A stretch of DNA of 64,000 nt from Bugula neritina (GCA_964035545.1 OZ037772.1:6494889-6558888); one strand, 5' to 3'. Counted from the stretch's first letter, positions 6,768 to 32,600 are shown. Notes: a model not told the origin generated them from the letters alone. Translations and numbers: made by a program.

Positions 6768-8085
6768 ATGGGTTCAGGTGCATCAAAGAAAAGTGAAGTC
6801 ATAGTTGAGGAGACAGTAGAGGAAGTAGATAATTATGATGAGCTGTATAGTGATAAAAAAGACGAGGAAATAGGTCAGTTTTATTCACTCAACTCTATCA
6901 TACAGGTCAGTTTACAAAACTCGTTCAACTTTAACTTTCTAGCAAAAAATTTTGTAGGTCATTTGTATTGATTTGGTTCTCTTTTAGTATTTTTACAAAG
7001 CTTCTGGCACCTGCCTTTAGATTGATTGGAGATAGTCATGTTTTGTTGATCACAAACTCACAGACATACAGACATACACACGCATTAATCTGTTCAGCTT
7101 TATTTCTAAGAGGAGACCAATCCTATAGGTTCAAAATATTATTATGCTTTTGTTTCATCAATGTAATAAGGATGAATTTATAAAAAAGTTTATCAAGTTG
7201 CAAGAGAAAATTTGACTATTGGGAGGTGATGTGAGCTTTATGACTCGTGGAAAAAAAATATAACGCTTTTCAGTTCTATTTCATGTTGGCCAAAGGCTGA
7301 TAGCGTATGCAGTCTTTAGACAGTTTTACTATGTTTTACCCTCCATATAAGATTGATCTGTTTATGTAGGCCTAGCTAACTGTATTTAATAAAACTCTTC
7401 TAACTTCAAATTCCAAAAAACTCTCAACATTTGTGATTCGGAAGAATATGATTTTTAGATGTTTAAAAACTAGATTATTTTAACTTAGTGCATTCTAACT
7501 ACTGCAATGGCTACTTGTCATGTAAAAGTTTTATAAGCCACTTTTTAGGAGAATGTGTTTAATTTTTACTTGAAAATTAGTGTCGGAAAGTATTTGTTTT
7601 CGTCAAACTCTCTCAGCCTTCTTTACTATGCAAAGTCAAAATCTGCAGAAAAGCTTCCCCATATATATATATATTTTTTTTTATGTAATTTAACTTTAAA
7701 TTTTTGGTCCTAATTTGCTAATGTGTACCAAATAATATACAGTGACCTCTATGCCGGTTATCTGCAGCTGACTGGGGTATTATTCCACACTGATCTCTAA
7801 TATCTGCTTGTTTGTAGTTGACGTTCCTCTAGAAGCATTTCCTAGCCTACAGAACTCTAGATTCTGGCAGAGTAACAATCCTGTAGAACCAGTGTTTGAT
7901 CAGGGGACGGGTAAGCTACTCCCCAAACCTCAGTGCTACGATGTGAAATTCATTGAAGAACTCAAGGAGAAAACCGTCAAGACTGAAGTGAGTTGCACAT
8001 TTTAATCAGTTTGGAGTTATCTTATATAAGAGCATTTTAAACAGAGTCCAATAGTTATTTATGCACACGCACGCGCGCGCACGCA

Positions 8086-8117
<32 letters not shown>

Positions 8118-11100
8118 CACCAAAAATGCACCAAACATACATCAAACACACACACACAAAGGCACATAAGCCTAAGTTTATATTGATGTTATGGTGCTGC
8201 GTTTGTCCTAAAGTCCTGAGTTAATACTCAGTTTGTTGTGTCAGTTTGATGAGATCCTGCTGACGTCTGCTGTGGAATCTCTGGTGGAAGAGCTGACCAA
8301 AGACTGTGACTCAGTCGCAGACAAGGTTCTCACATTCTACAGATGGATTAGGGAGACGGAGTCAGACGTCCCCTCAGCTAATGTCGACCACCCGGCTTAC
8401 TATTTTGCTAAGAATGTCAAACAGCCCATTGCTCTGCTGGAATTGTTCCAGAAACTCTGCGAGTGAGTAGACAGTCATTGTGATTAAATTCGGACAGCTT
8501 GTATACAGCACAAAAGTTACAAATAACTTGGAATGTTCTATCTGCAACATATCCCTGAATATTGTGTTTATCTTTATATTCATAAATAATGTGAGAAATT
8601 GTAATATTTTGGGTTTTTGTTCAAATGCTGGAGATTTTCTTTTAAAAGATTAATCTAAGACTATCTAATGTGCATCAAGAGGAATTATTACATGGCACTA
8701 TTTGTTACACAATTTTTTATTGTAATGTACATATATTTGATTGATGAAATTATTTGCTATTAACAGCTGAAATGTGATCAACTATTGTGCTCTTCTAGCA
8801 ATATAACCTGCCTATTAGCAAGATCACAAGCTTGAAATCTCATCACAATATATTTTAACAGAGAAATTACTTGTTTGTATCCTGCAGTAAGATATCATGC
8901 CTTTCCTTGTCATGCTTGTTTTATTATTTATTATCTGCATTTTAGATCAGCAAAGATAGACTGTAAAATAATCAGAGGTTATGGGAAGGGGGCTTCATTC
9001 GCCAAACAACTAGGTGAGGGGGCGTGGGGCTATTTTTATCTGCTAGAGTTTTGACTTAGCACCAACAGTTGTAGAAAGAATCAATTAACTTTATCTTCCT
9101 GTTTAATCCTGTGAAGTAAATAAAAGCGGAAAATCTAAATTTTGTAGTTCTTTTTCAAATTAATCATTATTTATAGGATTTTCCCTTTATTCGCGTTTAG
9201 TGATATCTGATTTTGTTAGAAAATATGTTAAGTACAACTTCAGTTTTTTCTGTGCCTCACTTCTTATGAATCTTTCTAATGGCTTGAGGCTTGACTTTGG
9301 TATAAGTTACAGTATAAAATGCACTTAGGCCTTAGGGGGAGGGGGGAGGCATATTCACAACCAGTTGGAAACCCTTGGAAAACCTAGTATAGCATGTTAT
9401 TGTTCTACTTCATACATTTACTTCTCTTTTTAGAGTAATCCTTTTTTATAGCTCCAGTATTCTAGACCACAGTTCTTAGTTTTTGAATACAGAAAGTTAA
9501 AAAAAACTGCCTTGCTTTGAGTTTACATGGGTTTTCCTATATTCTTTTATATTTTACTGTTTGTCATCCCCTTTTCTTCCACCCTCTTTTCCTTCTAACA
9601 TGCATATCCTGTCACACAGCACCTCTTTATATTATTATAGCTCATTCTAACCAACTTGAATAGTTTTATAAGCAGCTCAGAGTTGGGGGTGAATGAGTTT
9701 GGGTTCTACTAAACACCCCACTTCAACCTCAAGAACCCAAACTACTGCACTCATCTACCCCCATCTCTGAGCTGCTTATAGAACCACTCAGCCAACTTAG
9801 TGTTTTGTCATAGAGGTGGTGTTGTAAAAAATTTCATTAACCCAAGTTCTACATTGTGCTTATGCATTGTGTTTGGAGCATTGGTTACACACCACCTGAA
9901 TACAAATGTGTTTTCTCATTCAGCTCAACCAACTAACTAATAAATTTGTTCTATTGATTGAATTATAACACCAAATATTCTGATAATAATACAAACAATA
10001 TTTAAAGTATGATATTAAAAGGCATTCATCAGATTCATTCACCCATTTATATATTTTTTTTGTTTCAACATCTACACAAATTTTAAGAAGAACTTTTAAG
10101 CTTAGCTGGGAGATATAATTTTACATATTCTTTTCAATATATTTGTGTTACTGCATACAAGTAACGACTAATAAATAAAGACTGTATATATGTGTTCAAG
10201 AGTTGCAATTCTACTAGAACTTGTAGTATGCAATATGGGTTAATGTATATAGTCTATACGATCCAACCTAACATTGCAAGCTCAATTAACATAATTATTA
10301 ACCCAGAATATAGGATAAAAGTCGTGTTCATGAACTGGGTATTTCATATTGACAATTGCTAGAAGCAGCACCAGGTTGGTTGGTGTTGGGAGCTCAAAAC
10401 ACTGGTGTGCATGCAACTTCTGTATTCAGCCACCCTAACTCAGTGCTGCTTCTAGCTGAATTATTTCATTTCACACCAATCTATAACTTTATTGTATAGT
10501 CTGAGTTCCACGCTGTAGTCTGATTTGAAGGGACCGAGAAGATAAAGTTGCGAGAGCCGAACCACCACTGGGTGGCCGTGGCTATAGAGAAACACTGGTA
10601 CCTGATAGACCTCATCTGGTGTCGGCAGCAACAGACAGACTTCTACTTCCTGTGCGAACCCGCCATATTTATCTACAACCACTATCCTCTCGAGAAAGAC
10701 TGGCAGCTCTTGTTCCGTCCCGTTACAAAGCCTGAGTTCATTGAATTAGCGTAAGTAATCTCCCAGGCTAATATTTTATTTCCACTGAATATTCCAGGAC
10801 CTTCTCCATATGTTTGAGGGGACAATTCCCGTGCTACAGAAATTCTCAATCGATGGAAATTATGATAGATAAAATAAAAACTGTCAATAAATAAATAATT
10901 TTTATAAATAAACAGTGTTTACAAGTAAATGGATAATGTTGATAAATAAATTGAAATGCTAATAAAATTAATATTATTTCAACTGACAAGTAAAGATATC
11001 AGCTAAATACTGCCACTTTGCCATTCATCCAATTGTCTCAATACTCTACACATTCTGTATTCACAGGTTTTTACACAAGTCATTCTACCACCACGACTTG

Positions 11101-14100
11101 GAGCTACAGAGTCACCAGTCCTTCAGGTTCAAGTCCATCACAGGTGTGTGCCCTCCCTTCTTCATTATCTGATTTTAGATCCCAGTCTATGTTTTCTCAC
11201 ATTCAATACTCTGGACCAGAGGTGTCCAACTTTTTCAGCGGAAAGGGGTGGGAGTCACTGAAATGTAATATTCCATGCCGAGGTCCACATTGTAAACTTT
11301 AGCTTATGCTGGAGGCATTAGTATTTTTCCAAATTATTTTGAGTCACTACACAATAAAGTCCCAATAGTTACTGCAGGCTGCATGTTTTGCAGCTGTTTA
11401 TAAATAAGGCATTTAAAAGGTGGTTTTTCACTCTATTTCATGTATGCTGTGAAAGACATTTCTAGTTTTATACCTTTGAGGTTCACATTAAGGTAGGCTT
11501 GGGGGACCACATTTGGCCCTGAGACCAACTGTTAGACAGCCCTGGTCTAGATGGTAACCTCAGGTCGTTCAGAGCTTAGCCCAGTTTCTCTGAAACTCCC
11601 AGCTGTGCATACTAATTCAGTTAACATGTGTTCAGCTTTTGTCAACTTGTCGGCTGGTCTTTTAGGAGAGGAAGTTATACGTCTCGGGTATAAGGAGGAA
11701 AGAATATGGAGTTACCGTCTGACATGTGAGAAAAGTGGAACTGTTGTTAAGAGTTTAGGAGGAGTGCCTCTGGAGAAGTGTGTCATGGTGGAGGTAATTA
11801 CCAATAGCTTTTTATTTTGCTTAAAAATCTGTAGTCTCCTTGGTGTAATGGTTAGTGCGCCTGTTTGCAACATGGAGGTCTCAGGTTCGAACCCCAGTGG
11901 GGGGAAATTTTATAATTTAGCTGGTTGCTTGACTTGCTTCTATATAAATAGCTTTAAAAATGCTTAGATTTAGTCAAATGCTTTTTCGAAAATCATTTTA
12001 ATTCAAGAAGTTTAGTCAAATATCTTTTTATATCTATGTATAACCACCTGTCATGTCATTCCATATGTTGACAGGCGTTTGAAGGTACCGTGAGGTATAA
12101 CATCAGAATGCCAAGTGTCGGCAACTACAGAGTAGACATCTTCTGTCAAGATCCAGAATATGTGGCCACCCCACCTTCTCTAGTTACTACCTACATTATA
12201 CAGGTGAGTGGTAACCTGTCACTGAGTGTCACAAAGCATGACACAATAGCTGTCAGTGTGACATGCCACAACTTGTCACTGTGTGTCAAACAGCATGCCA
12301 TAGTGTGACATACAGCATTTCACACAACATGACTCAGTGCGTGGCAGGTCTGTTCTTTGTCTAGCTGCATTGTTATTCTAAATAATCACTAGTAAATCCT
12401 TATTAGTGTTTACGATATCTCAATATCAAGACTAGTCTGAAAGATGTTGAAATATATATTAAACTTTTTGAATTCTGAATAAACTATTGCCGTTTCTACT
12501 TTAATACCAAAGTTGAGGTAAAAGGAAGAACAACTTCATATCTCATTGAATAAATTTGTACACACATTGTCTACAACTGTTATTACTTGACTATACATTT
12601 TTATATTATCAGTTATTATAGTATAATTTTGTGTATCTCTACTGTGTTTTAGTGTCAAAAAGGCCTCGTAGGGTTCAGAAACTTTCCTGAACTAGAAACC
12701 ACCCTGTGGGGTCCCACAAAGCAGATGTTACAGTACGGCCTCTTGCCCAAGAGTCATAAGAGAGGGAGGTGAGTTGACATGTCACATCAGGTGCTCTCAG
12801 GTGTCACATCAGGTGCTCTCAGGTGTCACATTCGGTGCTACTGGCTGCCATGTGGAAATTTTGAAATTGTCTTCTCACTAATTCAGGTTTTGTTCCCGAG
12901 TTCATTCTCAAGCTTTGTAATAAGTAATAGTAATAGCTGAAAAGTATGAGCTGCACCCTATAACCTTGCTTATATTATGTTTAAGTATATTATATTACAT
13001 TATTTCATGTTATTTTCTATTATAATATTCTACATTAATATATTTCATAACCCTTTTGGTTTTATTATACAAACACCGTAGATTTAGGAAGGTTATTTTA
13101 TCATAAAATTGCTCCTTTCCTGCTGGTGGTTAAAGCACTAGCTTGGTAAACACTACGTCAGCGGTTCAACTCCCAATAAAAGTCATGTTAAGAAGAGCAT
13201 TCAGTCATAATTGCTCTCACAATAGAAAACGAGTTCTTAGCCATCCTCACTGGTTCCTAAAGGGATTTTAAATCCAGTATTTAGCACGCTATATAAACAT
13301 CACTCTACCAGGGGTCCTCACAGTGATTGTAGACCTATGTGAGTTTGAGTATTTGTTGGTATTATTTTATTCTGTTAAATCTGTCTCCAGGGTGTTTGTG
13401 GAAGAATCGGCTCAGATAACTTTCGACTCTCCGAAAGAACAGTACCTCGTCTGCCATCTTGATACCGAACAGGAAACAGATTTCGACCTTGAGCAGTGTG
13501 TTATTGATTCCTATAACAGCGAAGACAAAGGTGGGTCAAGGTCATTACCTCAACTTACTACTCTAATCTAACCAGGGAAAGTATGATTTGCTATACAGTA
13601 GAAAATGGTTTCACTTCAAACAGATATTTGGAGAAAAATGATGTCTTTATTTAAAAGAAAAATAATTTCCATCTATTTTCTGGTTAGATATCTATTAGCT
13701 AGCTTTCTGTAATACCTAGCATTTATTTTTATGAAACTATAGTGGAATTGTCTTTCCTTCGTTTGTTTATTATGACTCACCTAAAATATTAGCTGTGTTA
13801 TACTGCATTACATCTATTATGATTACCATTTTATTCTATAACAGGGAATTGATGTATCTAGTGTGTTTTAAAGGCATGGAGTAACTAAACGTTTTTAAAA
13901 GCATCTTTGAAAAGTACTAAGTACTATGGCACTAATACTAATTTTATTAAACAATTAATTTTATTTATAATTTTAAAAGAACATTTATAATTACTGCTTT
14001 TAATTATTTGTATAACATTATAAAAGTAGTGTTTTTATTATTATAACATGGTAATTTCGCTTCCAGATAGTATAATATTAATATTCATAATAATGTGTTC

Positions 14101-16886
14101 TCAGTTATCAGTTATTGTGTTGCTATAGAGATCGCAGTGAATGTACTACTGCCCCTGATTGGTCTATACAAGCTGGACATATACCTGGAGCCAGAGAAGC
14201 AGGAGGGTGAGAAGGTCTACCTGGTGTCATACCTCCTCGAGTGTATCAAACCTTTCTCTCAGCGCCTCGTCTTCCAGAACTACGGGGACAAACTCGGTGT
14301 GCAGAGCATGAAGAAAGGTAGGTCAAATGGGCGGGGCTAGTATACACTGTCTATGTGCAAAGTACTAAAATAGGTCAATAGTGGGCGGGGCTAGTATACA
14401 CTGTCTATGTGCAAAGCAGATGAAAGGAGGTGGAGCTACCTAACTTGTTATTTTTTCAAGCAATTAAATTGAATATATTTTAGGATTTTGTATCTGCAAA
14501 ACTTTGAATAAAAATAGGAATTACTTATTAAACTTTATCAAAACATTAACTAGACTGAGGACCAAGGAAATATTAGACTAGTGAGGGTGGATACTGATAC
14601 ATCCCCGTATTTTCTAGTGTTACAAGAGGCTACTCGGACTAAGAATCTGCACAAACTGAGAGCCGCTGTCGCGCTGATGAAGACGAATAAACTGGTGGAT
14701 AAAGTAGCGGAGGAGGCAGCATTGGCTGAGGACATGCTTCAGAAGATGGAGCAGATTGATGAGATGAAGGTGCGTTCTATACCCCCTCTAACTGGGGGCA
14801 GCCCTATCTGATGAGAACTTGGGCTAAATCACTCCTTGCAAATATTGAATTATCCTAAATCGAAAAAAGTTTGATTGAGTTTGCTAAGCTTTGTCGTATT
14901 ATACAGTAGCTAGGAATATAAGTTATGGAATAGTTTTGACAGTTGAAAACTCAAGTAGATGTTAGCTTGTGGTTTTAAGATTGAAATTCATTGATTGATC
15001 GATTCATTAATTGGTTAGTTGTTTTATTACATATAACAGACATAACAACACGTGAAACTCAGGGTAAACACTGGTTATAATAGTAGACATGAACAAATTT
15101 GGAAACAAGTCAGAACTCTGTTGGATTATTTAGAATAAAATAAAAAAGTATCAACAAAAGTTTGGATTCAGACTAAGACCTGAGCTACTAAATGTGTGAC
15201 AGTAAGCATAGCCTTAGGTTCATGATGAATTCTTGCAGCAAGCTATAGAGAAGACTGACAGGGGTACCATGAGTGAGATGAGAAACTATTCTAAACCTCC
15301 AAGGGCAGTTCACAACGTGTTGACCGCAGTGCTGCTTCTACTTGGTGACCACGAGGATATCACGAGGGTAGGTATTCATCGTGTAGTCACTCGTGGCTGT
15401 CTGACTCACCTCTTGCAGTCATCTCTCTTTAAAGATATGCCAAGACATTATGATGGGGTTACGTGTTTACCTGATTCAGAGTTGTGTGCCCTTTCAAGCC
15501 TGGTGTACATTAAATATTTCAGCTGCGCATTAACTTGATATACTTGAAAGTTCCTCTGTGATTTCAGGGTGTTTTTTTCTTAATTTGTTGTGACTTATTT
15601 ATATTTGTAGTTTGTAGTAGTTTGAAAGTGTTTATAAAGATGTGACTTAGATACTGGTTTATTAGGTTGAATGAATTTTTATGTAAAGTACTGAGTTTAT
15701 ATGATTACAATAAGTGGGAGGAGCTAGCTTACAATATTGGAACTAGCATAATTATTATGACACTCCTGTTTTATAGATATTAGTTTCATAAATGCCTCTC
15801 TGGTAAAAGATGTCTTCTATCGCTTTTTAAATTACTAACAAGTTTTGAACCATAAAGAGGAGTAGCTGTGATTTAAGGGTTGAAGCACTGGCTCATTTAA
15901 CACACCGTCAGTGGTTCCATTCCCAGTAAAGGCTAATGGTAATGTTAGGAAGAGCATTCAGTCATAATTTTGCTCCTGTGCAACAATAGAAAACAGGTTC
16001 TTGGCCCTTACCCTTACCATCAGGGGTTTTCATAGGGGTGGTGACTATAAACTCACATGAATTTTTAGACTATGAAGTGCAGAAGTGAGCCATGTATAGT
16101 TGTCATATTGAGTGACAAATTCAATGTGAATATTTTTTCCTCCATAAAATCGTAAAACAGACTTTCGAGTTCGTAAATCACCGTGCATGGAAGTATTTCT
16201 CTCTACTCACAATGTGAATCAGTTGGTGTTTGCTAATTATTTCCCTTCTCTTATTGGTTAGTTGTGGACAGAAGTGCAGGTGAGATGCGGGAATCTCGGC
16301 AAGTACAGCATGAGCAAGCGTATCAGATCTTTCAACATCCTCTATGTTCATCACGAGATATCTCGGAGATCAATGGATATTCTTGAAAAGCACGAACTGG
16401 AGATGTTGCAAGACATCAGTCCTGGCGCCGCGCTCTTCTACTCGTGGGTGAGTATCACTCACTAGTACTAGTAGTACTCACTAGTATTAGTAGTACTCAC
16501 TAGTATTAGTAGTACTCATTAGTGTTAGTAGTACTCACTACTTACTAGTACTGGTACTACTTTCTAGTAATAGTACTACTATTTGCTACTAGTGAGTGAT
16601 TAACTAACTAACTAATTACTGTTGTCTGATAGTAACTAAGGTGAGGGTCACTAATAGTAGTGAGTGACTATAACTAGCTGTTTAGTGAGTGACTGACTAT
16701 TCTATTCCATTTCTGCAGGCTTGGTCAGTCAACATGGAGGTACTCAACCGAGTTGATCACAACTTGACTGTTCAGCCGGCAAACGCAAAGAGACAGAAGG
16801 AGATATTCGCTATGATTGCCAGAGGGGATTGGCCGGTGATTGAGTCTACTGGAGCAGTGCCAGAGGTTACGCCTGGTGATAATTGA
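6768..16886 (+). CDS. KY (kyphoscoliosis peptidase)/hillarin-like transglutaminase-fold protein with Ig-like repeats and a C-terminal dynein-MTBD-like domain; 15 coding exons, ~731 aa
   Basis: Exons 6768-6873, 7818-7987, 8245-8462, 8946-9013, 10531-10750, 11067-11143, 11666-11793, 12075-12203, 12653-12768, 13391-13530, 14129-14317, 14618-14769, 15239-15367, 16262-16447, 16719-16886 join in frame (2196 nt, all GT-AG). KY-family motifs LFQKLCESAKIDCKIIRGYGKG, HHWVAVAIEKHWYLIDLIW, DFYFLCEPAIFIYNHYP..KDWQLL..P, MPSVGNYRVDIF, LPLIGLYKLDIY. N-terminus MGSGAS. Confidence 0.88.
9667..9780. mobile_element. Short MITE (TATAAGCAGCTCAGAG TIR)
   Basis: TATAAGCAGCTCAGAGTTGGGGG ... CCCCCATCTCTGAGCTGCTTATA; related ends at ~40601 and ~59195. 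Confidence 0.7.
10359..10455. mobile_element. MITE, CTAGAAGCAGCAC-TIR family
   Basis: CTAGAAGCAGCAC ... GTGCTGCTTCTAG. Confidence 0.7.
11217..11544. mobile_element. Old non-autonomous hAT (Charlie-like) element
   Basis: CAGAGGTGTCCAAC ... GTTAGACAGCCCTG followed by GTCTAGAT; same TIR type as 53269-54989. Confidence 0.65.
11835..11905 (+). mobile_element. tRNA-derived SINE head / tRNA pseudogene
   Basis: A box TGGTGTAATGG and B box GGTTCGAACCC with imperfect stems. Similar heads at 28625-28693 (-), ~39085 and ~41015. Confidence 0.65.
15860..16050 (+). mobile_element. tRNA-derived SINE with conserved core GTTAGGAAGAGCAT(T/C)CAGTCATAATT
   Basis: Degenerate A/B boxes followed by the core. Other copies at ~13125-13290, ~20200-20360, ~32960-33170 and ~51320-51500. 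Confidence 0.7.
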
Positions 16887-17853
16887 ATGAGACATCAGTG
16901 TTTGAAGGAGACATCAGTGTTAAAATGAAATATCCGTCTATTGTATATTATGGCTTGTTTGTAACTAATATTCTATTTGATGTAATAAATATACAGTAAA
17001 ACAATGACTCACTCGATGTTATGTGAAAAAAAAAGATAAATTTTAAAATCATCAACTTATACTAAGTTTTGATTCATTTTGTATAAGTAAGATGAACATT
17101 ATTCTATTTAAAACTGACTTTTAAGAAAAAATATTATTCACAAATTGCAAATACATGCATTTAATAATTTCTTTTTAATATAATAAAATCATGTTTCACA
17201 GTGAATAACTTTTCGAGATTTCATAATCATGAGCTTACAGTTGTGTGGGCTGTGCTCACTTTGTAGTCCGAGTTTTATATCGAGTTGTAGAGTAAGCAAC
17301 GTTAAATGTTTACAGAGTAATGACATAATGACAATTACGACTTAATTGACTGGATTATTTTCTGGAGACAAGGGAAAGACAACTTTAGATTTTTTTCAGT
17401 TGGTGTAAGTTTTGAATGTATAAAATTATAGTGTCTCATGGTAGGCATCACCTACTCCAGAATATTTACTTGGTACTACTTTCACATGCTGTCTGTCACT
17501 TCTCTATTGCGCTGTGTTCTCTAACTATATATTAGGGGTTACTTTCTCTTTGACAAGTATATAAGTTTATTGTTCATTATCATTTGAATGATGTTACAAG
17601 AAGTACACTAGCATATAAATAAGAATGTCAATCATCTCGTGGTGATAATCATAAACTAATAGTTGAGTTGTTTTAAATGTATATAATTATAGGGAAAGAT
17701 AACTCCATATTACAGTTCTAGCTAGCTATTTACAGAAAAACCGCTAACAATGCTTTTTAAAAGATAATCTCAATTGATTGCTGACCCAAAAAATAAAATA
17801 TCATAGAAAAATATTATATGTTTGATAATAAAGTTGATTATAGTTTTGCGTCA

Positions 17854-20800
17854 CTACTTGGTACAAACGACGCAGGTGAGTTCACGTGCATTGATGTAAG
17901 GTGGGCAGTGAGAAAGGCCTCCGTATTCTCCACAAAATCCTGATACAAAAAACATCTGTGGTCCTCCGGTTATGTTCTGAGTACCTACAACAAAGAATTC
18001 ATAAAAATTTTAAAAATTAGTGTTTTAGAAATGTTGCTCTAACATTTTGGAGTTGTCTTACTTTTCCTTTTCGGATGGTTGCTTTGAGTTGCTTCACTTG
18101 CTTCTTTCATATTTGATTGAACTTCCGGCTGCAGTTTTGCTTTGATGCAACTATTTCATAGGGCGAATGAAAAGATATTTCGCATAATGCGATAATGAAC
18201 AAACGAAGTGTATGTATGCTTATACACAATACATCTTGTTTGGAGTTATCTTTTTTGAAGTTACACATTCTAGATAAGTTTAGAGTTGTCCCACCTGAAA
18301 TAACATCCGGCTCCATGTCCACACACTCAAAGATCAGTTTCGTATCTGTGGCATAACTACTCATCAAATAGCCTTCGTACTGTTTATCCCAACCCACTGG
18401 ACATGTTCTTTTAGCTGGCACCATAAGCTGCAGAAACATTAGAGCACAGGCTATACAACTTGCAACTAGTAATCATTGCAACATAAACTGTGCTCCTTAT
18501 ATATGAATAATATGACATGTGTTCCTTATACGAAACAGCTTTTGTGGCACCTCCTTACCTTTGTAGTGCCAGTTGTCAAACATACACTGCAAGCTACGTT
18601 GTGTCCGTGAGCATTGTCCGGAAATATTCCATATCCTTCGTAGGAGAGATATTCCGCTGCATACAGCTAAAATGTTATTATGTAACTAACTGAATAAGTT
18701 GAATGCATAATACCATTAAGTAGTACAGTTATAAAATATAAAATTGACTAATACAAAAATATACAATGAAATAATATGATGGTATATAAAAGTTATCTGT
18801 GTCATCACTAAACAAGTCAATGAGTCAACTTTGAAACTCACCCAAGAGAAAGCATAGCTGTCATTCTTCATGTCAAACTTGTTCCACTCCGGGTCGGTGG
18901 GCATACATAAATACTGAGCCCCACCCCCAGTGGCTGCTTTACTGCTAGACGAAGAACCAGCGCCAAACCCTGCATATTCAATTCAAACAAATATTTGATA
19001 AATGATCTGATGAATTATTTCAACAATACTCGCAGTAATGACTAGATACCAGTTGCGATCGTAAACTGATACACACTACTATACTAGCAAATATTTCAAA
19101 TTATGATAATATGAACATATATATTTCTGTTTTACTTCAAAAAGTTCCAAAACGATTTTCAAAACTGTTGAAGGAATTTTATAATAATAATAATATACAT
19201 TACATGTTTCTGATAATTGCATCATGCTGCTTTTATTGATAAAATACTTTTATTAAAGATATTTTACAATTGAGCAATTACTGTGACGTACTTTCCTATC
19301 ATTTTCATGCAGTTGGTATTGTTTACTTTTTTAGTACCAAAACGCTTTAATCTTAAACAATTAAAACTGTGCTAATTTAACTAACTTGAAAATGCAACTT
19401 TATCCTGCACCAGCACATATACCAGCGTACCAAAACATGAATATTTGAAATTAAACTGGAAATATTAGCTAAATTTGCTGTAAACTTTCATGTTTAGTGC
19501 AATGTAACCATATGTACTAATCTAGGTTGTATTATTCTATTGTTGTACAGAACTGTGATATTATATACTAAGAGAAACAGCGTCTCAAATGCAGATATAA
19601 ACGCCCTATGATTAGTTTCACATGACTGGAGCATGCAAAAGCCAATCAGTTTTGAGGATACGATTTGCAGTACAAGTGGATCTGGTAACAGAATACTTTG
19701 TATTGTTATCTTAGCTGTTGTTGATTTAAGTAAACTAGAATCACTGGCAATGCTGCACAAGCAACACAACACTTTCATTTTTACCAATACTTATATATTT
19801 TTATCTATATCATTTTTGCTAGAAGCAGCCATGATGTGAAGCGGGGCTGTCCAATAGGCAGCCCCAGGGCCAAATTTGGCCTCCAGCTTACATCTATGTG
19901 GTCCTCAAAGGCGCGCATAACAAATGAAAATATTTTGCTTATATATATAAATTGCATGGAGTGGAAAAACCCTTTTAAATGTGGTTTTCAGATACGCGTT
20001 ATAAAGCCTGCAGTAATTGTTGGACTTCATTGTGTAATGATTGAGGGATTTTGATTAAAGTTATTTGAAAATTACTGAGAGTGTGGCCCCAGCCAAAGCT
20101 GAATTTTACACAGTGCCCCCCAACCACTGAATTTTTTATTTTAGTAGCTCTTGGTCTGAGTTAGTTGGCACCCCTGTCTAGAGGGGTGCCAACTTTAATG
20201 GCTTATAAAACTTAAGTCATGGGTTCAATTTCCATTAAAAACTATTGCTGCGATACTAAAAAGAGCATCCAGTCATAATTCCTTCTGTGCCACATATGAA
20301 CAAATCCTTAGCCTTCATAAAAAATTATTTCATTAGGCTTCTCACAGAGATGACGAGATTAAAACTTTGTGGGTTTTATCAAGTGTTTTTATTCGCTATT
20401 TTCTAGCCTCAGTTTCAACTTCCCAACGTACTGAGGGAGGTGATTATAATAAAGCCAACATGACAGCTTCACAAGTAAATTAAATGTGGTAGGTTGGGAT
20501 TACCCGGTAGCTCATCTGATGTAATGACTGGCCAGAGGCCTGCTGTTCGAATCTCGGTGGTGAATATATTTTAAATGAAATAGAAGCTAGATCCTACTTC
20601 ATTGTTAAAATACAAACTTTTATACAACTAGGTTCAGAATTGGTAGCAATGATATGTGAGAATAAGAACTTAAAAACTAACACACAAAAAACAAATTCAA
20701 TTTGGTTAGAGCTTTTATAGTGAAACACTTGCTGACCTGAGTAAACAAGTTTAGCCGACGCTGGGCAGGTCACTTTACCCCATCTGGTGTACACAACTTC

Positions 20801-21350
20801 ACTAGTAGGTGGTGAAAGGCTAGCTGGTGAAGAAGTGGGCGTGCCCGGCTGTGAAGAAGTGGGTGTGCCCTGTTGTGAAGAAGTGGGCGTGCCCTGCTGT
20901 GAAGAAGTGGGTGTGCCCTGCTGTGAAGGAGTGGGCATGCCCTGCTGTGAAGAAGTGGGTGTGCCCTGCTGTGAAGGAGTGGGCATGCCCTGCTGTGAAG
21001 AAGTGGGCATGCCCTGCTGTGCCTTTAGATTATTTAACTCCGCCTTTATCTCACTGAACCTGATGGCTACTCCAACTATGGTGCCAAAAACCAGAATCAA
21101 AGAAATTAGACTCAGTACTATGGGAATCCTAGAGTGGGTGTTTTCCCAGCAACTAAAACATTATATCACAATCTAATAGACGTGGTATATATTTGTAAAC
21201 TATTCTCCTGAGATGTTTTGCGTTACGTTAAGAAAAGTGTGTCTAGGGGGATACTTGCCTTGGTTTGAACTGTCTGAAGGAACCTAGTATTTGGCTGCCA
21301 TCTTTGCTCCAGGTTGTAGCTGTATCAGTTTCATCATTGGGAGCAGCCAT
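17854..21350 (-). CDS. Type II membrane protein with a short-chain collagen C4-like (spongin NC1-related) C-terminal domain, copy A; 6 coding exons, ~335 aa
   Basis: Exons 21350-21259 (GC donor), 21152-20737, 18969-18842, 18666-18559, 18427-18295, 17984-17854. Family motifs VVYTRWGKVTCP..LVYSG, GGGAQYLCMPTDPE, YAAEY, HNVACSVC, MVPAKRTCPVGWDKQYEGYLMS, FECVD, CPPY...ELTCVVCTK*. One TM helix and a coiled neck near the N-terminus. Confidence 0.88.
19842..20176. mobile_element. Non-autonomous hAT (Charlie-like) element, internally deleted
   Basis: CGGGGCTGTCCAATAGGCAGCCCCAGGGCC ... GTTGGCACCCCTG followed by TCTAGAG; homologous to the ends of 53269-54989. Confidence 0.7.
20828..21019 (-). repeat. 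Coding 24-bp minisatellite, 8 units encoding QQG(T/M)PT(S/P)S
   Basis: Tandem GAAGAAGTGGGCGTGCCCTGCTGT units inside coding exon 2 of C4-like copy A. Confidence 0.95.
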
Positions 21351-24069: not shown

Positions 24070-24896
24070 GTCATATCGAGAGCAGAAACCAGTAGGATAT
24101 TTCCAACTTCATGTCTGGTCTCAGTTTGTGCAGTGCTTGAAATAATAATAATTGTGGGGGGAGGGAGGAGTAGGCATGTTGTGCTCCGTAGGCTTTTCAA
24201 TGCCTCTTAATTCGGGTCAGATGTTACAAAGATTACCACCTCAAGATTTATTTTAACCAACTAGAGGTAAGTAGTCTTTCCATCATACAATGATAAATTG
24301 AAAATACTTGACATGATTAGGATTGCGATGTTATATTGAAATTACTGTTTCAACTTGATAAACCAATGAACTGAACCTATTAGGTATAAGGTTTTATTTA
24401 TCAGCTGCAATTGAGTTCACTGTTGTGGCACTAGTCATGGGTTTTCCTGGTTTTTCCAATTCTCAATGTTTTGCAATGTATCCAAGTGATTTTCTGATTG
24501 GATGATATTTTTATTGAACTTCATACCATATATACACAAGCACTACAATTCTGGTAGCACTATTTCACCATCAGGCATCTTGTGAGTATATTATGCTTTC
24601 TGTCTAAAATAAAGTAGTAAACAGTTATAAATTAAGACTCTAGCACAAATTCAGCACCATAACATTTACTTTTAACTTATGGCTTATTAATCATAGAGTG
24701 TGTCAGTGTGGGTGTAGTTTGTGTGTCTCTGTGCCTGTGTGCATGTTCACATTATTGTTGACCTTTTATGGTAGTTTCTACTTGTTTATGATGTGAACTT
24801 TGCTGCCTGCTTAATAAACTGACAACTGAATAGAATAGTATTCATAATGTTGTCCATTGTTTAATTTTTTTACTATTTTTCTTAGGTAAATTGAAG

Positions 24897-25772
24897 ATGG
24901 CTGATGAAGTCCTGGATATAGCCGTTGCTCCTGCTGAAACTGTTGTTGATTGTGTCGACATCGCCCTTGATTCCAAAGCAGGTAGATGTGGCATTGCATG
25001 GAAGATTACCATGTACTTAATTCTGTTGGCTCTGACATTGGTGAACTTTGTTATTGGAGTATTGGGACTTGAAGAGTTGATTCCTCTGATCAGGTCATAT
25101 TATGCTACTGATCGTGGGCTATTTCCCCTTTTAATGATATGGATTACTGGTTATATTTTTGAAACGGCTTTCTTTTTTAGTCTTTTTGCTCGAATAGTTT
25201 GTTATATATATGATATTCGCAAAATGCGTACCAGAGTAAGTCCTGAGTTAACTATAAAACAACAGCAACATAAAGTTCTAAAATGGAAAAGGTGTCGCTG
25301 TCGCTGTCGCTGTCGCTGTCGCGCCTGTTGGAGTATAATGAACTACATTCTAAGTTTTCTTTTCTCTGACATCATGGTCGGGTTGGGTAGAGTTTTAATA
25401 GCATTTCAACATTCTGCCCAAGTTTCACTTCTGCAGACTCCTATTGAGAGACTGTCAAGCATTGTAGCTTTCACTGTCACCTGCATTCAAATCTTGTTGG
25501 TAACCGGTCAGCTTACATGGAACTTAGTAACTAGCAAGAAACGTACTGGAAAATGTTGTTCAAAAGAGTATCTTTTGGATATTGTTGCTCTTTTTTTAAC
25601 GTGTATGGCTTTAGCTCCTCCTGCGATGAGCATGTTTATAGGCATCAAAGCTTTTAGTGTTGAGGAAGAATTTGTATTAAATTTACCTTGGCTGATTGCA
25701 CCACCAATTGGTTTATTTTTTATTTTGTCTATACTTGTCTCAATTATTGTTGGGTGCACTAAAAGTTCATAA
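24897..25772 (+). CDS. Uncharacterised ~291-aa multi-pass (about 6 TM) membrane protein, single coding exon
   Basis: 876-nt ORF in AT-rich DNA. ATG lies just after a polypyrimidine/TAG acceptor (24885); upstream donor GAG|GTAAGT at 24266; AATAAA at 25931; six hydrophobic segments. Confidence 0.75.
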   Translation: MADEVLDIAVAPAETVVDCVDIALDSKAGRCGIAWKITMYLILLALTLVNFVIGVLGLEELIPLIRSYYATDRGLFPLLMIWITGYIFETAFFFSLFARIVCYIYDIRKMRTRVSPELTIKQQQHKVLKWKRCRCRCRCRCRACWSIMNYILSFLFSDIMVGLGRVLIAFQHSAQVSLLQTPIERLSSIVAFTVTCIQILLVTGQLTWNLVTSKKRTGKCCSKEYLLDIVALFLTCMALAPPAMSMFIGIKAFSVEEEFVLNLPWLIAPPIGLFFILSILVSIIVGCTKSS

Positions 25773-26409: not shown

Positions 26410-28308
26410 TTTGATGAGATCCTGCTGACGTCTGCTGTGGAGTCTCTGATGGAAGATCTGACCAAAGACTGTGACTCAGTCAAAAACAAGGTTCCCACAT
26501 TCTATACAGTTAGATTAGGGAGACGGAGTCAGACGGCTCCTCAGCTAATGTCGACCACCCGGCGTACTATTTTGCTAAGAATGTCAAACAGCCCATTGCT
26601 CTACTTGCCGACAAGGTTCTCACATTTTATTATTTGCATTTTAGATCAGCAGCAAAGATAGACTGTAAAATAATCAGAGGTTATGAGAAAGGGGTTTCAT
26701 TTGCCAGCCAACTTATAGGTGAGGGGACGTGGGGCTATTTTTATCTGCTAGAGTTTTTATTTAGCACCAACAGCTGTTATAGAAAGATTCAATAAACTTT
26801 GTATTTGTGTTTTATCCTGTGAAGTAAGTTAATAAAATGAAAATCTAAATTTTCTAGTTTTTTAAGTCTATCATAATTGATAGGATTTTCCCTTTAATCA
26901 TTTTTTGGTGATATCTGATGTTTTACAAAATATATGTCAAGTACAATTAGTGACAAGTCAGGTGGCTGGTTGCTGACAAGTTAATGACAAGTTAGTGACA
27001 AGTTAGTGTCAGGTTAATTTTGGTGACAGGTCCTTGTGACAGGTGACACCTTAAAGTGTCACTGGCAGGTCTTTATGACAAGTCAGGGACAATGTTTGAG
27101 ACTTTTTCATTGCTTAATTTTCACTCACTATTATTTTTCTTCAACTTGGGTTCCTAAAAATAATTATTTGAGGTTTCACACCCATTTGTTTTATTGTTCG
27201 AGTGTTTATATATATTTATTTTTGCGAGTTTTCTAAGCCATACAAGTATGTGTTTCTTTGCTGGACCATGTTCTTCAGCTTCTAGTTTGCTTTGCTTCTT
27301 ATGAATTCTTATAAATTGCTTGACTAGAGTATAATTATACTGCTGTGCTAACTTAAGTTATAACAGTATAAAATGCACTTAAGCAATAGGGGAAAAATAT
27401 TCACAATCAGTGGGGAAAACCCTTGGAGAGCATTTACCTTGAAGATATAGTTTAGCATGTTATTGTTTTACTCCATAAATTTACAGCCTTGCCAACAACC
27501 ATTGTTTTAACTTCTATAAAACAACTTTTTATTGTTCTCTGCATGTTATTGTAGCTTTAGTATTCTAGACCATAGTACTTGGTTCTTTTTGAAATGAAAA
27601 AGTTTAAAAGAATTGGCTTGCTTTGAACTTACTTGTATGGGTTTTCCTATATTCCTATTTATACGTTTTACTGTTTGACCTAGATTGTCACCCCTCTCTC
27701 CTCCCCTCTTCCCTTCTCTTACACCCCCTTTCCTTTTTACAAGCAAATCCGGTCACATAGTACCATTTCATGTCATTAGAAATCTTGAATTGTTCATTCC
27801 AACCAACTCATTGTTTTGTCATTTTACATATAACCCTAGTTCCTCAATTATAATTTATATATAATAAATATTTAAATATACTTACTATATATTGCATTGC
27901 ATTGCTGGTTGTAATTAGACACACCACATAAATATAAACCAACATGGGCAACTTTAGCCTATTTTTAGTCTGTCTGCATAACATAAAGTTTTTTCATTCA
28001 CCTCAACTATTCAACTAATTCTAGCTGATGCAGCTAATGGTTGCACTAGTATAAAATAAAGGTGAGTGTCACTAATAGTAGTGAGTGATTATTTAACTAG
28101 TTGTTTGGTGAGTGACGACTATTCTATTCTATTTCTCCAGGCTTGGTCAGTCAACATGGAGGTAATCAACCGAGTTGATCACAACTTGACTGTCCAGCCG
28201 GCAAACCTGAAGAGACAGAAAGAGATATTCGCTATGATTGCTAGAAGGGATTGGCCGGTGATTGAGTCGACTGGGGCAGTGCCCGAGGTTACACCTGGTG
28301 ATAATTGA
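26410..28308 (+). pseudogene. Deleted duplicate of the KY-like gene (relics of exons 3, 4 and 15 only)
   Basis: The exon 3 copy has a 2-nt insertion (TTCTATACAG vs TTCTACAG) and has lost its donor. Exon 4 copy at ~26646-26718, then intron 4 sequence that jumps to the last exon (28141-28308). Exons 5-14 are absent. Confidence 0.88.
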
Positions 28309-28624
28309 ATGAGATGTCAGTGTTTGAATGAGATGTCAGTGTTTAAAGGAGATATCAGTGGTTAAAGGAGACATCAGTGGTTAATTGAGATATCAGTGTT
28401 TTGTATATTTATATGGTGTTGGTTGTAACTAATAATCTATATGATATAATTAATAAACAGCAAGAAATGACTCAGTCAGCAATTTGTAATGTAAAGACAC
28501 ATTTAAAACTGACATCATTTAATTTTACTAAGCTTTCATTACTTTTAATTGATAAAAAAGTTGAGCATCTCTCTATTTGAAGTTGGCTTTCAAGAAAGGA
28601 ATTGTTTATGCTTAAAAAAATCTT

Positions 28625-28693: not shown

Positions 28694-29623
28694 ATCACTG
28701 AGTAAACTAAATATTACAATGTGTACAATATACCGAGTGTTTGGTTCAACTCTCTTTATTATAACAAAACATTTCTTTACAATTATGAATACATTTTTGA
28801 GGTCTCAATAGCCACGTAATTATTTAGTTGTGTGGGGTGTGCTCACTTTGTAGTCCAAGCACAATCTTGAGCTGTCGAGTTTATGATGATGAATGTTTAT
28901 GGAGTCATAATATGACAATTATGCTGTGAGCTTGATTCCGTGTCTTCAGGGGAAGACAACTTTCGATTTTCTTTTAGCTGCTGTTAGTTTTGATAGTATA
29001 ACATTATAGTGTTTAGTGATAAGCATCACTTTCTTCTGAATACTTACTTGGTGCTATTTTCACATGCTGTTTGCCACTTCTCCATTGCGCTGTGTTCACG
29101 AACTATACATTAGGGGTTACTTTCTCTTTGACAAGTATATAAGTTTATTGTTCATTATCAGTTGAATGATATTACAAAGATTACACTAGCATATAAATAA
29201 GAATGTCAATCATCTTGGGATGGTAATCATAAACCAATATTTAAGTTATTTTAAAATCAATTTGATATAATTTATCAAGAATGTATATAATTATAAGAAA
29301 AGATAATTCCATAATACCGTACTGGTGAAATTGCGATATTCTGTAATAATCTAGCATAAGCATTCCTTTGCCATGGATATGTGTGCACTTGTGAACCTAA
29401 CATTATAATTATGCTATTATTTTACATGCAATTCATAGTATTTAAGACAAATCTATTTACAGAAAAACCAGTAACAATTTGCTTTTTAAAAGATAATCAT
29501 TTGAATAGATAATTGCTCATATGACCAGCTTTAATTGCAATTGATTGCAGACCCAAAAGGTAAAATTTCGTAGAAAAAATATTATATATAAGTTTGATAA
29601 CAAAGTTGATTAGTTGTTCGTTA

Positions 29624-32600
29624 CTACTTGGTACAAACAACGCAGGTGAGTTCTCGTCCATTGATAAAAGGCGGGCAGTGAGAAAGGCCCCCGTATTCTC
29701 CACAAAATCCTGATACGAAAAACATCTGTGGTCCTCCGGTTATGTTTTGCGTTCCTGAAACACAGAATTCATAAAAGTTCAGAAAAATAATATTTCATAC
29801 AAGTTATTATAGCATTTTGGATTTGCCTTCTTTTCAAGCTTGTTACTTTGAATTGATTCACTAGCTTCTTTTTTATTTAGATTTGGAGTTGTTCCTTCGT
29901 TTTTATTAGAGACTTGCTACTAGTTATGTATACTTGGAGACAAACTATTTTGTTTGGAGTTGTCCTATTTGAAACACCTTTTGCATGATAAGTTTAGAGT
30001 TGTCTCACCTGAAATAACATCTGGCTCCATGTCCACACACTCAAAGGTCAGTTTTGTATCTGTGATATAACTACTCATCAAATAGCCTTCGTACTGCTTA
30101 TCCCAACCCACTGGACATGTTCTTTTAGCTGGCACCATAAGCTGCACAAACATTAAAGCACAGGCTACACAATTTACAACTAACTTTTACATTCATCCAT
30201 TGCAACATAAACTGTGTTCCTTATATATGATCATGATGTCTCAGGATTTGCGGCACCTTCTTACCTTTGTAGTGCCAGTTGTCAAGCAAACACTGCAGGC
30301 TACGTTGTGTCCGTGAACATTATCTGGAAATATTCCATATCCTTCGTAGGACAGATATTCAGCTGCATATAGCTAAAATGTTATTATGTAACTAAATAAA
30401 TACATAAATACAACTAAATTAATGATGCAAACAATTAATCTAATTTCAAAAACCTGATTAAATAAAGAAGATGAATAATTGAAATATGAAATTGATCATA
30501 TATATTGCAAAAATATACAATATATATATAATATGATTAAACAATATAACAGTTATATCATCACTAAACAAGTTAACGGCTCGATGAGCCAACTTTGTAA
30601 CTGACCCAAGAGAAAGCATAGCTGTCATTCTTCAAATCAAACTTGTTCCACTCTGGGTCGGTGGGCATACACAAATACTGAGCCCCACCCCCAGTGGCTG
30701 TTCTACTGCTAGACGAAGAACCAGCGCCGAACCCTGTATATTCAATTCAGAAATATAATATTTGATGAATTATTTCAACAATACTTGCAGTAATAATTAG
30801 ACATCAATTGCGATCTATAATTGACTACTACATCATGTTAAATTTGATTCGAATATGATATTTTCTATCTTTTACTTCAAAATGTTCCAAAATCATTTTA
30901 AAACTGCTAATGAACTTTTATCATAATAACAATAAAATTAATAATAATACACATTGTTTCTAATAATTGCTTCAAGTAATGAAATATTGCTTATTCCAAT
31001 AATGGTACAGGCTTATGCTTTAAATAAATGAATTCGTATTATATGTAAATATTAGCTACCAGGTTTTATTAATTTAATTATTATATTGAATTTTAACTAA
31101 CTTAACACATTCTATAGTCTATATTCTTATCAAATAATTATAATTAGTTGAAGTACTTATACACACACCTCTATCTGAAGGAATTGTGGCCATTAATTTT
31201 ACACAGTTTAGAGTTTTTCAATAATTAATAATTATTACATTCTCTTTGTATTATAGCTGAAGATGCAGACCAAAAGCTATGCATGAAAATTATACTGTGC
31301 TTTCTATTATTAACTATAATCAAGTTTATAAATAATGCAATGTTGTTATGTTGCAAATGTATATCTTTATGCATATCTTGTCTAAGTGTTGCAATATACA
31401 ATGCTGTATATAATATTACTTCAATTGTTTTTGCAAAGCTTGGTGATAGAAAAACAAAAATAAGGCTTCTTACTGCTAGTGAATAAATTTTATAGCTAGT
31501 ACTTGCTGTTAGTTATTTAGGCCATTGTAATCTCCTATGCAAAACAGTTTTCAAAACTGCATGCAACTTATCCCATTATAGTGGTGCTAGTCAAGTTGAT
31601 AATGACCTTAAATTGATAACTTGGCTTTTCAATGTGTGTATGGAATGGAAATGATTATAGCCGTTATAGTTTCACTGAGTAAAGGGGGAGGGTAGAGGGG
31701 GGAGGGGTAGCTTTGATGATTATAGCTGTCGCTACTATATAATCTGTACAAGCAGTTCTAATACACTGGAGGTCGTGGCATCTTGTGCTAAGCACTGGTT
31801 TAGCCTTAGAAACTAGTTGTGAACAAGTGTTTATATAGGGTGGGAAGGGACATACCCTTAATATTTGTACTTGTTCTGAATGAATTACTCACAGATCAAA
31901 ACATCATCTGGGTTTAATGAAACTAGCAGATATATGTTGATGAACTAGTATTGTTGAATTCAGATTATATTATAAAACCATATTAATAACTTTGCTGATG
32001 GAATAATAGATTACAATGTTATAAAATTTAGGGGCCAAAAAAACCAAGTTATTATAACTAAATAGTTTTGACTGACATAACTTGATAGACTAGAATGGTG
32101 TTATAAACATTAGCATTATAATAGACTCTGCCAGTCAAATTAAACTATTATATAAGATTTACAGTTATAAATCATTAAGTCATCATTTTAGGAGACTCCA
32201 TTGGATTCATGAGAAATCAAAACATAACAGAGCTAACTTTTTAGGAAGCTGAGGTTAAGCTAATAGCAGTTATTGCTAAATTACTTTTTATTTTGATACC
32301 ATTTTTTCTATTCATTAAACTTGCGTTAACTTTGCAAAATTTCATTGAAAATGCAACTTTGATGTTTGAGATAAGGTTTGAAATATCAGCTAAATGGCAC
32401 TAAACAGCCACAATCACTGTGGTTCTATTTCTTCAGATTATGCTAACAGATGCTCGTACGATGGAGTTTAAGGTTTCTGTTTGCATGAACTTATGGTTGT
32501 GATCTCATTCGATGCATCTGTTTCCAAACATTAAATGAAAAATCCTCCATTCGCATAATGCAAGCTCATGGAAACGTAGTGCAATGTAATGTCATGTAGT

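What the first reader, a model, noticed from the sequence alone, without database searches (positions are those of the whole stretch)
15239..16760. Stand-alone dynein microtubule-binding-domain-like module fused to a myristoylated transglutaminase-fold scaffold
Seen: exons 12-15 encode a helical run (AEEAALAEDMLQKMEQIDEMKQAIEKTD) followed by TMSEMRNYSKPPRAVHNVLTAVLLLLG...WTEVQ...SMSKRIRSFN...ILEKHELEMLQDISPGAALFYSWAWSV. Established: the dynein heavy-chain stalk tip has the pattern l.Elrsy..PP..V..v..AV..LLg...W......fl..i..fd......v...S.aa..l..Wv. Inference: this domain has been co-opted outside a motor, in a protein that starts MGSGAS (myristoylation consensus) and has a KY/hillarin core, suggesting a membrane-to-microtubule linker, possibly ciliary. 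I know of no characterised KY/hillarin protein with this module.
Basis: partly seen in the sequence, partly recalled or inferred. Interest (0 to 1): 0.85.

Follow-up and report, generated by a model that had tools for sequence, protein, structure and literature searches.

The report
Motor-less dynein foot on KY scaffold
This invertebrate gene joins a probably lipid-anchored, enzymatically dead scaffold to a copy of the small 'foot' that dynein motors use to grip microtubules; the same motor-less foot is reused in many undescribed proteins from corals to amphioxus, but whether it still grips microtubules is untested.

Summary
Confirmed. The window holds a 15-exon gene (6768-16886, +; 749 aa; all GT-AG, frame unbroken): MGSGAS start, KY-type transglutaminase fold without the catalytic Cys, two KY Ig-like domains, then a ~200-aa helical module (E12-E15).

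The module is a dynein stalk-tip/MTBD homologue. A family profile hits only dynein heavy-chain entries in the PDB (best E 2e-10). A model of the nearest relative matches mouse dynein MTBD at Z 17.8.

The fusion is not peculiar to this gene. An orthologue has E10-E14 in order, and 19 mollusc/brachiopod proteins carry KY plus module, 16 starting MGxxxS/T. The module also sits on EF-hand and other proteins from cnidarians to amphioxus, and in at least four other genes of this genome with the same two introns. The scan noted several of these before.

Caveat: the H1 tubulin contacts are kept, but the H6 arginine is aspartate and the H3 contacts are lost here. The fold also occurs in radial-spoke proteins away from the lattice. 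Best reading: a static membrane-to-microtubule tether of low affinity (0.45); rival: a non-tubulin binding module (0.38). No RNA evidence was obtained. No paper describing the family was found.

The parts
6768..6873 (+). E1: start codon, MGSGASK N-myristoylation consensus, acidic linker
   Evidence: first ATG after an in-frame stop; MGxxxS/T in 16 of 19 KY+module relatives
7818..7987 (+). E2: N-terminal linker
8245..8462 (+). E3: transglutaminase-fold core, part 1; Pro at the catalytic-Cys position
   Evidence: motif position from my knowledge of the PF01841 motif
8946..9013 (+). E4: transglutaminase-fold core, part 2
10531..10750 (+). E5: transglutaminase-fold core, part 3 (His and Asp positions kept); weakest acceptor site of the model
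   Evidence: E=4e-10 to KY relatives
11067..11143 (+). E6: start of KY Ig-like domain 1
   Evidence: needed to keep the frame; domain role inferred from position
11636..11793 (+). E7: KY Ig-like domain 1
   Evidence: domain role inferred from position
12075..12203 (+). E8: end of KY Ig-like domain 1
   Evidence: PF23265 E=0.0046
12653..12768 (+). E9: inter-domain linker (WGP motif)
   Evidence: E about 1e-4 to KY relatives
13391..13530 (+). E10: KY Ig-like domain 2
   Evidence: 78% identical in orthologue L021
14105..14317 (+). E11: end of KY Ig-like domain 2
   Evidence: PF23265 E=6e-4
14618..14769 (+). E12: helical hairpin cap and CC1-like helix of the module (aa 540-589)
15239..15367 (+). 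E13: end of CC1, MTBD helices H1-H2 with the E-x-R and PP motifs (aa 590-632); phase 0-0
16262..16447 (+). E14: MTBD helices H3-H6 and start of CC2 (aa 633-694); phase 0-0 exon shared by all non-motor copies checked
16719..16886 (+). E15: CC2-like helix with a Pro + basic motif, tail and stop (aa 695-749)
   Evidence: (67% in L019)
16984..16989 (+). AATAAA, candidate polyadenylation signal 98 nt after the stop
   Evidence: such hexamers are common in this AT-rich DNA
26410..28309 (+). Broken partial duplicate of the gene: E3 (frameshifted) run into E4, then E15; E5-E14, including the MTBD exons, are missing

Best explanation
A static membrane-to-microtubule tether. SHOWN (sequence and homology): one 749-aa ORF with an N-terminal MGxxxS motif, a transglutaminase fold lacking its catalytic Cys, two KY Ig-like domains and a C-terminal dynein-derived stalk tip (short CC1, H1-H6, short CC2) capped by a helical hairpin in place of the AAA ring. 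INFERRED: Gly2 is myristoylated and holds the N-terminus at a membrane. The dead enzyme fold and the Ig domains act as spacer and partner-binding scaffold, as in other inactive KY/hillarin/Cyk3 proteins. With no motor to slide CC1 against CC2, the tip is fixed in one registry and binds the microtubule surface through the conserved H1 residues: weakly, without ATP cycling, and in a pose that differs from dynein's at H6. A motile cilium or sperm flagellum is the likeliest site, but this is the weakest step.
For: Fold: model of the nearest relative (Ridgeia P0004, pLDDT 89) matches dynein MTBD at Z 17.8, rmsd 2.6 over 157 residues, and MT-bound 6rzb at Z 15.2. Sequence: the family profile hits only dynein entries, best E 2e-10. 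Yeast tubulin contacts E3122 and R3124 (PMC7042235) are E in 49/49 and R/K in 49/49 family members; this protein also keeps R at K3117. The family core is basic on average (+3.7). MGxxxS/T is in 16/19 KY+module proteins and in two non-KY carriers, so the module recurs on membrane-anchored proteins. A 162-residue chain of the Toxoplasma intraconoidal microtubule (9ya2_L, probably ICMAP2, which binds the outer lattice, PMC12819142) scores Z 9.9: a possible non-motor precedent.
Against: The R3201 position on H6 (salt bridge to alpha-tubulin E415/E420) is D in this protein and in 46/49 relatives. Most relatives have an R one residue earlier, but this protein has Q. R3152 and R3159 on H3 are T and G here. 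Net charge of E13+E14 is only +1. Radial-spoke chains 7jtk_C (Z 12.2) and 9fqr_Xl (Z 10.2) share the fold; the latter is probably EFCAB5, placed in the RS3 stalk bound to other proteins (PMC11779644). The structure is of a proxy, not of this protein. No expression or localisation data.
Confidence: 0.45

Rival explanations
1. The dynein-derived tip has been repurposed to bind a protein other than tubulin (as the similar domains of radial-spoke proteins appear to). The protein is a myristoylated cortical or ciliary-membrane adaptor that links KY-type partners (septin, filamin, Rho) to that partner.
For: Charge reversal at the R3201 position fixed across the family, a family-specific G-K-T-G-K insertion after H3, and loss of H3/H6 basic residues in this long-branch member. 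Same fold in radial-spoke chains, one of which has an orthologue in this genome carrying the module. A dynein MTBD can itself bind a light chain (6l4p title). Inactive transglutaminase-like proteins act as scaffolds (PMC3718969).
Against: The invariant H1 E and R/K residues are tubulin contacts in dynein; their full conservation from cnidarians to amphioxus is simplest to explain by a retained tubulin interface.
Confidence: 0.38
2. The family binds microtubules, but this fast-evolving copy has lost that ability and serves only as a folded cap or dimerisation element.
For: Long branch; no basic residue on H6 and near-neutral charge.
Against: Strong purifying selection on E12-E14 against the orthologue; all three H1 contacts kept.
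Confidence: 0.1
3. E12-E15 belong to a separate short transcript, or to a decayed dynein fragment, and the fusion is a modelling artefact.
For: No RNA reads could be examined. Short stand-alone module genes exist in this genome, and Ridgeia P0004 is annotated as a 191-aa protein.
Against: E11 has no stop and splices in phase to E12. An orthologue has E10-E14 in order at 68-78% identity. 19 database proteins have the whole architecture in one chain. No dynein AAA or stalk exons flank it.
Confidence: 0.04
4. An active transglutaminase or peptidase targeted to microtubules by the module.
For: His and Asp positions of the triad are kept in E5.
Against: No Cys at the catalytic position (Pro here; Gln in most mollusc relatives, which also lack the His).
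Confidence: 0.03

Closest known systems
Dynein heavy-chain stalk tip and microtubule-binding domain (Pfam MT PF12777; PDB 3err, 5ayh, 6rzb, 6kjn/6kjo)
   Same: CC1-H1..H6-CC2 fold (Z 14-18 on a proxy model), E-x-R and PP motifs, the two Trp, the H6 Ser, a Pro + basic motif in CC2.
   Different: No AAA ring, linker, buttress or long stalk; CC1 proline absent; helical-hairpin cap; five-to-six extra residues around H2-H3; Asp at the H6 Arg; own intron positions; below the Pfam cut-off.
KY / hillarin / LTD-1 / Cyk3 transglutaminase-like scaffolds (PF01841 + PF23265)
   Same: Transglutaminase-fold core followed by KY Ig-like domains; catalytically dead like Cyk3 (PMC3718969).
   Different: MGxxxS start instead of a LIM or SH3 domain; C-terminal dynein-derived module, not seen next to this genome's hillarin-like and other KY paralogues in the stretches fetched.
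Radial-spoke proteins with a similar fold: 9fqr_Xl (1509 aa, probably EFCAB5) and 7jtk_C (probably RSP2; chain names inferred)
   Same: Non-motor chains whose domain aligns with the module (Z 10.2 and 12.2). The genome's own 9fqr_Xl orthologue keeps the H1/PP motif.
   Different: Structural spoke subunits bound to other proteins; different architecture; 9-13% identity. From memory, unverified (papers not held): the radial-spoke structure papers may already call the RSP2 domain MTBD-like.
Toxoplasma intraconoidal microtubule protein, chain 9ya2_L (probably ICMAP2)
   Same: Non-motor globular domain on the outer microtubule lattice with 8-nm period (PMC12819142); Z 9.9 over 126 residues.
   Different: Z is within the range that helical bundles can reach by chance; 10% identity; binds as a dimer; the paper does not compare it with dynein.
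Uncharacterised lophotrochozoan KY + module proteins (e.g. Lingula LOC106169646, Mytilus LOC127719716, Biomphalaria LOC106062437) and EF-hand + module proteins ('trichohyalin-like')
   Same: Same module and, for the KY group, same architecture and N-terminus.
   Different: This gene is shorter (two Ig domains, like the Mytilus 767-aa form) and its module is divergent (about 31-57% identity by exon).

Membership tests
Dynein heavy chain | AAA+ ring with linker and tail | tested here: not met
   749-aa ORF with KY core; no dynein motor exons in the gene
Dynein heavy chain | Long antiparallel stalk whose registry is driven by the motor | tested here: not met
   Only about 25-residue CC1/CC2 remnants capped by a hairpin in the proxy model
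Dynein MTBD fold | CC1-H1-H6-CC2 fold and sequence homology | tested here: met
   Profile E 2e-10; Z 17.8 on a relative that is 57%/43% identical to E13/E14. The window's joined protein itself was not folded.
Dynein MTBD fold | Pfam PF12777 above gathering score | tested here: not met
   E13 15.7 bits, P0004 19.8, P0116 16.3, against cut-off 24
Dynein MTBD fold | Six tubulin salt-bridge residues on H1, H3, H6 | tested here: inconclusive
   3 of 6 kept (all H1); H3 pair T and G with an Arg two positions before the second; H6 Arg is Asp
Dynein MTBD fold | Microtubule binding | not testable with these tools
   needs biochemistry
KY/hillarin-like transglutaminase-fold proteins | Transglutaminase core (PF01841) | tested here: met
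   E3-E5 align with PF01841-positive relatives, E5 at E=4e-10; single exons do not reach Pfam
KY/hillarin-like transglutaminase-fold proteins | KY Ig-like domains (PF23265) | tested here: met
   E8 E=0.0046, E11 E=6e-4 exon-wise; full-length relatives far above cut-off
Active transglutaminase/peptidase | Cys-His-Asp triad | tested here: not met
   Pro at the Cys position; His and Asp present (motif position from my knowledge)
Hillarin / LTD-1 proper | N-terminal LIM domain | tested here: not met
   E1-E2 hold one Cys and no LIM pattern
N-myristoylated proteins | M-G-x-x-x-S/T start, conserved | tested here: met
   MGSGASK; 16/19 relatives. The modification itself was not tested.

The most novel reading that the evidence does not exclude
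Early animals detached the dynein foot from its motor and turned it into a mobile, registry-locked microtubule anchor. It was shuffled on phase-0 exons onto several membrane-attached proteins (myristoylated KY scaffolds, EF-hand rods and, by an unchecked scan note, a CatSper-gamma tail), giving an undescribed class of membrane-to-axoneme tethers in ciliated invertebrates that binds tubulin despite a charge reversal at dynein's key H6 arginine.
Probability: 0.4. Interest if true: 0.8.

Novelty: new variant of a known kind. Interest (0 to 1): 0.62.

Why it matters
The dynein MTBD is normally treated as a part of the motor only, with affinity set by the AAA ring through stalk sliding. A large natural family of motor-less versions with a built-in cap gives natural tests of what the foot does alone, of which contacts are needed (the H6 Arg is Asp in nearly all of them), and candidates for the poorly known links between ciliary or cortical membranes and microtubules in marine invertebrates. 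It also corrects annotation: about 100 database proteins called 'trichohyalin-like', 'uncharacterized' or even 'DNAH2' carry a domain that Pfam misses. If the module does not bind tubulin, it is a clear case of a motor part repurposed, linking it to radial-spoke proteins.

Tried and rejected

A relative (P0004) served as structural proxy.

Dead ends: E14 alone finds nothing in the PDB or Pfam. A first 14-exon model broke frame until E6 was added. A single-sequence fold of full-length Mytilus P0125 failed (pLDDT 33) and was not used. The tree on the 62-column E14 region is poorly resolved: it shows a long branch and a loose link to P0004, and cannot count KY-module fusion events. Two radial-spoke papers were not held. 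Paper searches for MTBD-like non-motor domains gave nothing relevant.

Rejected: chance match (shuffles); fragment of a dynein gene; active enzyme; a second intact copy at 26-28 kb (broken).

Full report
Observation. From the sequence I built a 15-exon model, 6768-16886, in which all introns are GT-AG and the frame runs unbroken for 749 codons. The finding's coordinates cover E13, E14 and the start of E15; the module begins in E12 (14618). Against a profile of 49 database relatives, E12, E13 and E14 score 20, 41 and 52 bits, far above shuffles.

One gene. Three other lines support a single chain. E11 splices in phase into E12 with no stop. A contig of a related species carries E10-E14 in the same order at 68-78% identity, and another carries E14 and E15, with mostly third-position changes. 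Nineteen database proteins from bivalves, gastropods and Lingula (two from unnamed assemblies) hold a KY core and the same module in one chain. Sixteen of them start MGxxxS/T and the other three look truncated.

N-terminal part. E3-E5 align with the transglutaminase cores of these relatives, and E8 and E11 hit Ig-like_KY. The catalytic Cys position holds Pro, while His and Asp are kept (motif position from my own knowledge), so the core is a pseudo-enzyme. Inactive members of this class (Cyk3, hillarin, LTD-1) act as cortical scaffolds (PMC3718969). There is no LIM domain.

The module is a dynein stalk tip. E13 alone retrieves only dynein entries from the PDB. The nearest longer relative, Ridgeia P0004 (57% and 43% identical to E13 and E14), hits DNAH6 at E=1.6e-5. 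The family profile hits 50 PDB sequences, all dynein heavy chains or their fragments, best E 2e-10. An AlphaFold model of P0004 (pLDDT 89) shows a two-helix cap, a CC1-like helix, H1-H6 and a CC2-like helix. It matches mouse dynein MTBD at Z 17.8, rmsd 2.6 over 157 residues, well above unrelated bundles at Z 8.5 or less. The ESM Atlas gives the same answer. Scores to low- and high-affinity dynein states are tied (Z 14.8 and 14.2), so the registry cannot be read from the model. Pfam PF12777 stays below its cut-off, which explains why the domain is unannotated.

A mobile family. The module occurs on EF-hand/charged-helix proteins of cnidarians, molluscs, annelids, nemerteans, a bryozoan, echinoderms, tunicates and amphioxus, and on other architectures. 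No arthropod, nematode or vertebrate sequence appeared among the named hits, but these searches are word-limited. In this genome it is in at least four more non-motor genes on contig C4: an EF-hand rod (1.52 Mb), a second KY protein (19.90 Mb) and two apparently short genes (19.894 and 20.43 Mb). All of these, the orthologue and Ridgeia share phase-0 introns after H2 and after the final Trp, whereas two of the genome's dynein genes read through the first position. This points to one origin of the non-motor module and to spread by exon shuffling (inference). The scan's first readers noted several of these copies independently.

Does it bind microtubules? Yeast dynein uses K3117, E3122, R3124 (H1), R3152, R3159 (H3) and R3201 (H6) (PMC7042235). 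I mapped them through the alignments and counted. E3122 is E in 49/49 and R3124 is R/K in 49/49. R3152 is K/R in 35/49. R3159 is G in 47/49, with K/R one position later in 46/49. R3201 is D in 46/49, with R one position earlier in 43/49. The window protein keeps all three H1 residues, has T and G on H3 (an Arg lies two positions before the second) and Q-D on H6; its core is nearly neutral (+1 against a family mean of +3.7). So half of the interface is kept and a key contact is reversed. Solved structures give precedents both ways. Chain 9ya2_L (Z 9.9), by size probably ICMAP2, sits on the outer lattice of a Toxoplasma microtubule (PMC12819142). Chains 7jtk_C (Z 12.2) and 9fqr_Xl (Z 10.2) are radial-spoke subunits. 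The latter is 1509 aa, probably EFCAB5, which lies in the RS3 stalk bound to RGS22, LRRD1 and STKLD1 (PMC11779644); its orthologue in this genome still shows the H1/PP motif. These three Z values are in the range that helical domains can reach without kinship, and the chain names are inferred.

Mechanism. Most likely (0.45): a myristoylated, enzymatically dead scaffold whose capped dynein foot holds a microtubule statically and weakly, tethering membrane to lattice, perhaps in cilia or sperm. Fold, fusion and motif conservation are shown; myristoylation, tubulin binding and location are inferred. The close rival (0.38) is that the foot now binds a non-tubulin partner. Minor rivals: this copy alone has lost binding (0.10), the fusion is an artefact (0.04), an active enzyme (0.03).

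Novelty. Both parts are known folds and the architecture is already in databases as uncharacterised models, so this is a new variant of a known kind. I found no paper on KY-MTBD fusions or on this non-motor family in the searchable library. Non-motor domains of like fold exist in solved ciliary structures, and from memory (unverified) one may already be called MTBD-like. The finding is real and testable, and would surprise a dynein specialist. Its value lies in the family rather than in this one divergent gene. Interest 0.62.

Noticed in passing
window 26410-28309 (+): Broken partial duplicate of the gene: frameshifted E3 joined to E4, then E15; E5-E14 deleted. Part of a larger local duplication (17765-19224 ~ 29532-30974; 20266-20851 ~ 33061-33691).
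   Followed up: yes
G000:C4:~7.167-7.169 Mb (L009/L030): Orthologue of bovine sperm chain 9fqr_Xl (probably EFCAB5; E=3e-7) whose C-terminus keeps the dynein H1/PP motif, bridging dynein MTBD and a radial-spoke domain in sequence.
   Followed up: partly
G000:C4:19893663-19894498 (L031/L033/L043): Apparently small stand-alone module gene next to the second KY+module gene. It keeps a Lys at the H6 arginine position, so it is the most dynein-like copy and a good first binding test.
   Followed up: partly
G000:C4:~1.516-1.521 Mb (L002/L010), ~19.900-19.910 Mb (L004/L014), ~20.430-20.432 Mb (L003/L012): EF-hand + charged helix + module gene, second KY + Ig + module gene, and a short helical-repeat + module gene; all share the two module introns.
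   Followed up: partly
PDB 9ya2_L, 7jtk_C/7jrj_I, 9e5c_2e: Non-dynein chains of Toxoplasma, Chlamydomonas and Trypanosoma microtubule complexes resemble the MTBD fold (Z 8-12). The Toxoplasma paper does not remark on it.
   Followed up: partly
ESM Atlas cluster (row 5): Oomycete proteins of about 400 aa combining IMPACT N-terminal and MT-like domains: another motor-less use of the fold.
   Followed up: no
G000:C193, C41, C125 (L006, L007): Small contigs with dynein genes full of in-frame TAA/TAG: probably ciliate contamination of the assembly.
   Followed up: no
P0018: A 764-aa amphioxus protein with the module is named DNAH2 in databases, a misleading transfer of annotation.
   Followed up: no
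window 24888-25769 (+): Intronless ORF of about 293 aa, hydrophobic (several likely membrane helices), no Pfam hit.
   Followed up: partly
window 18110-18982 and 29968-30974 (-): Duplicated gene with a GGGAQYLC motif and no Pfam hit; from memory it resembles short-chain-collagen-C4-like secreted proteins.
   Followed up: no
window 20597-21160 (-): ORF with a hydrophobic helix followed by 12-aa tandem repeats; the paralogue at 33461-33844 has far fewer repeats.
   Followed up: no
window ~41400-62800 (-): Tandem array of FMN-dependent hydroxyacid oxidase genes (PF01070) with long (TA)n runs in the introns.
   Followed up: no
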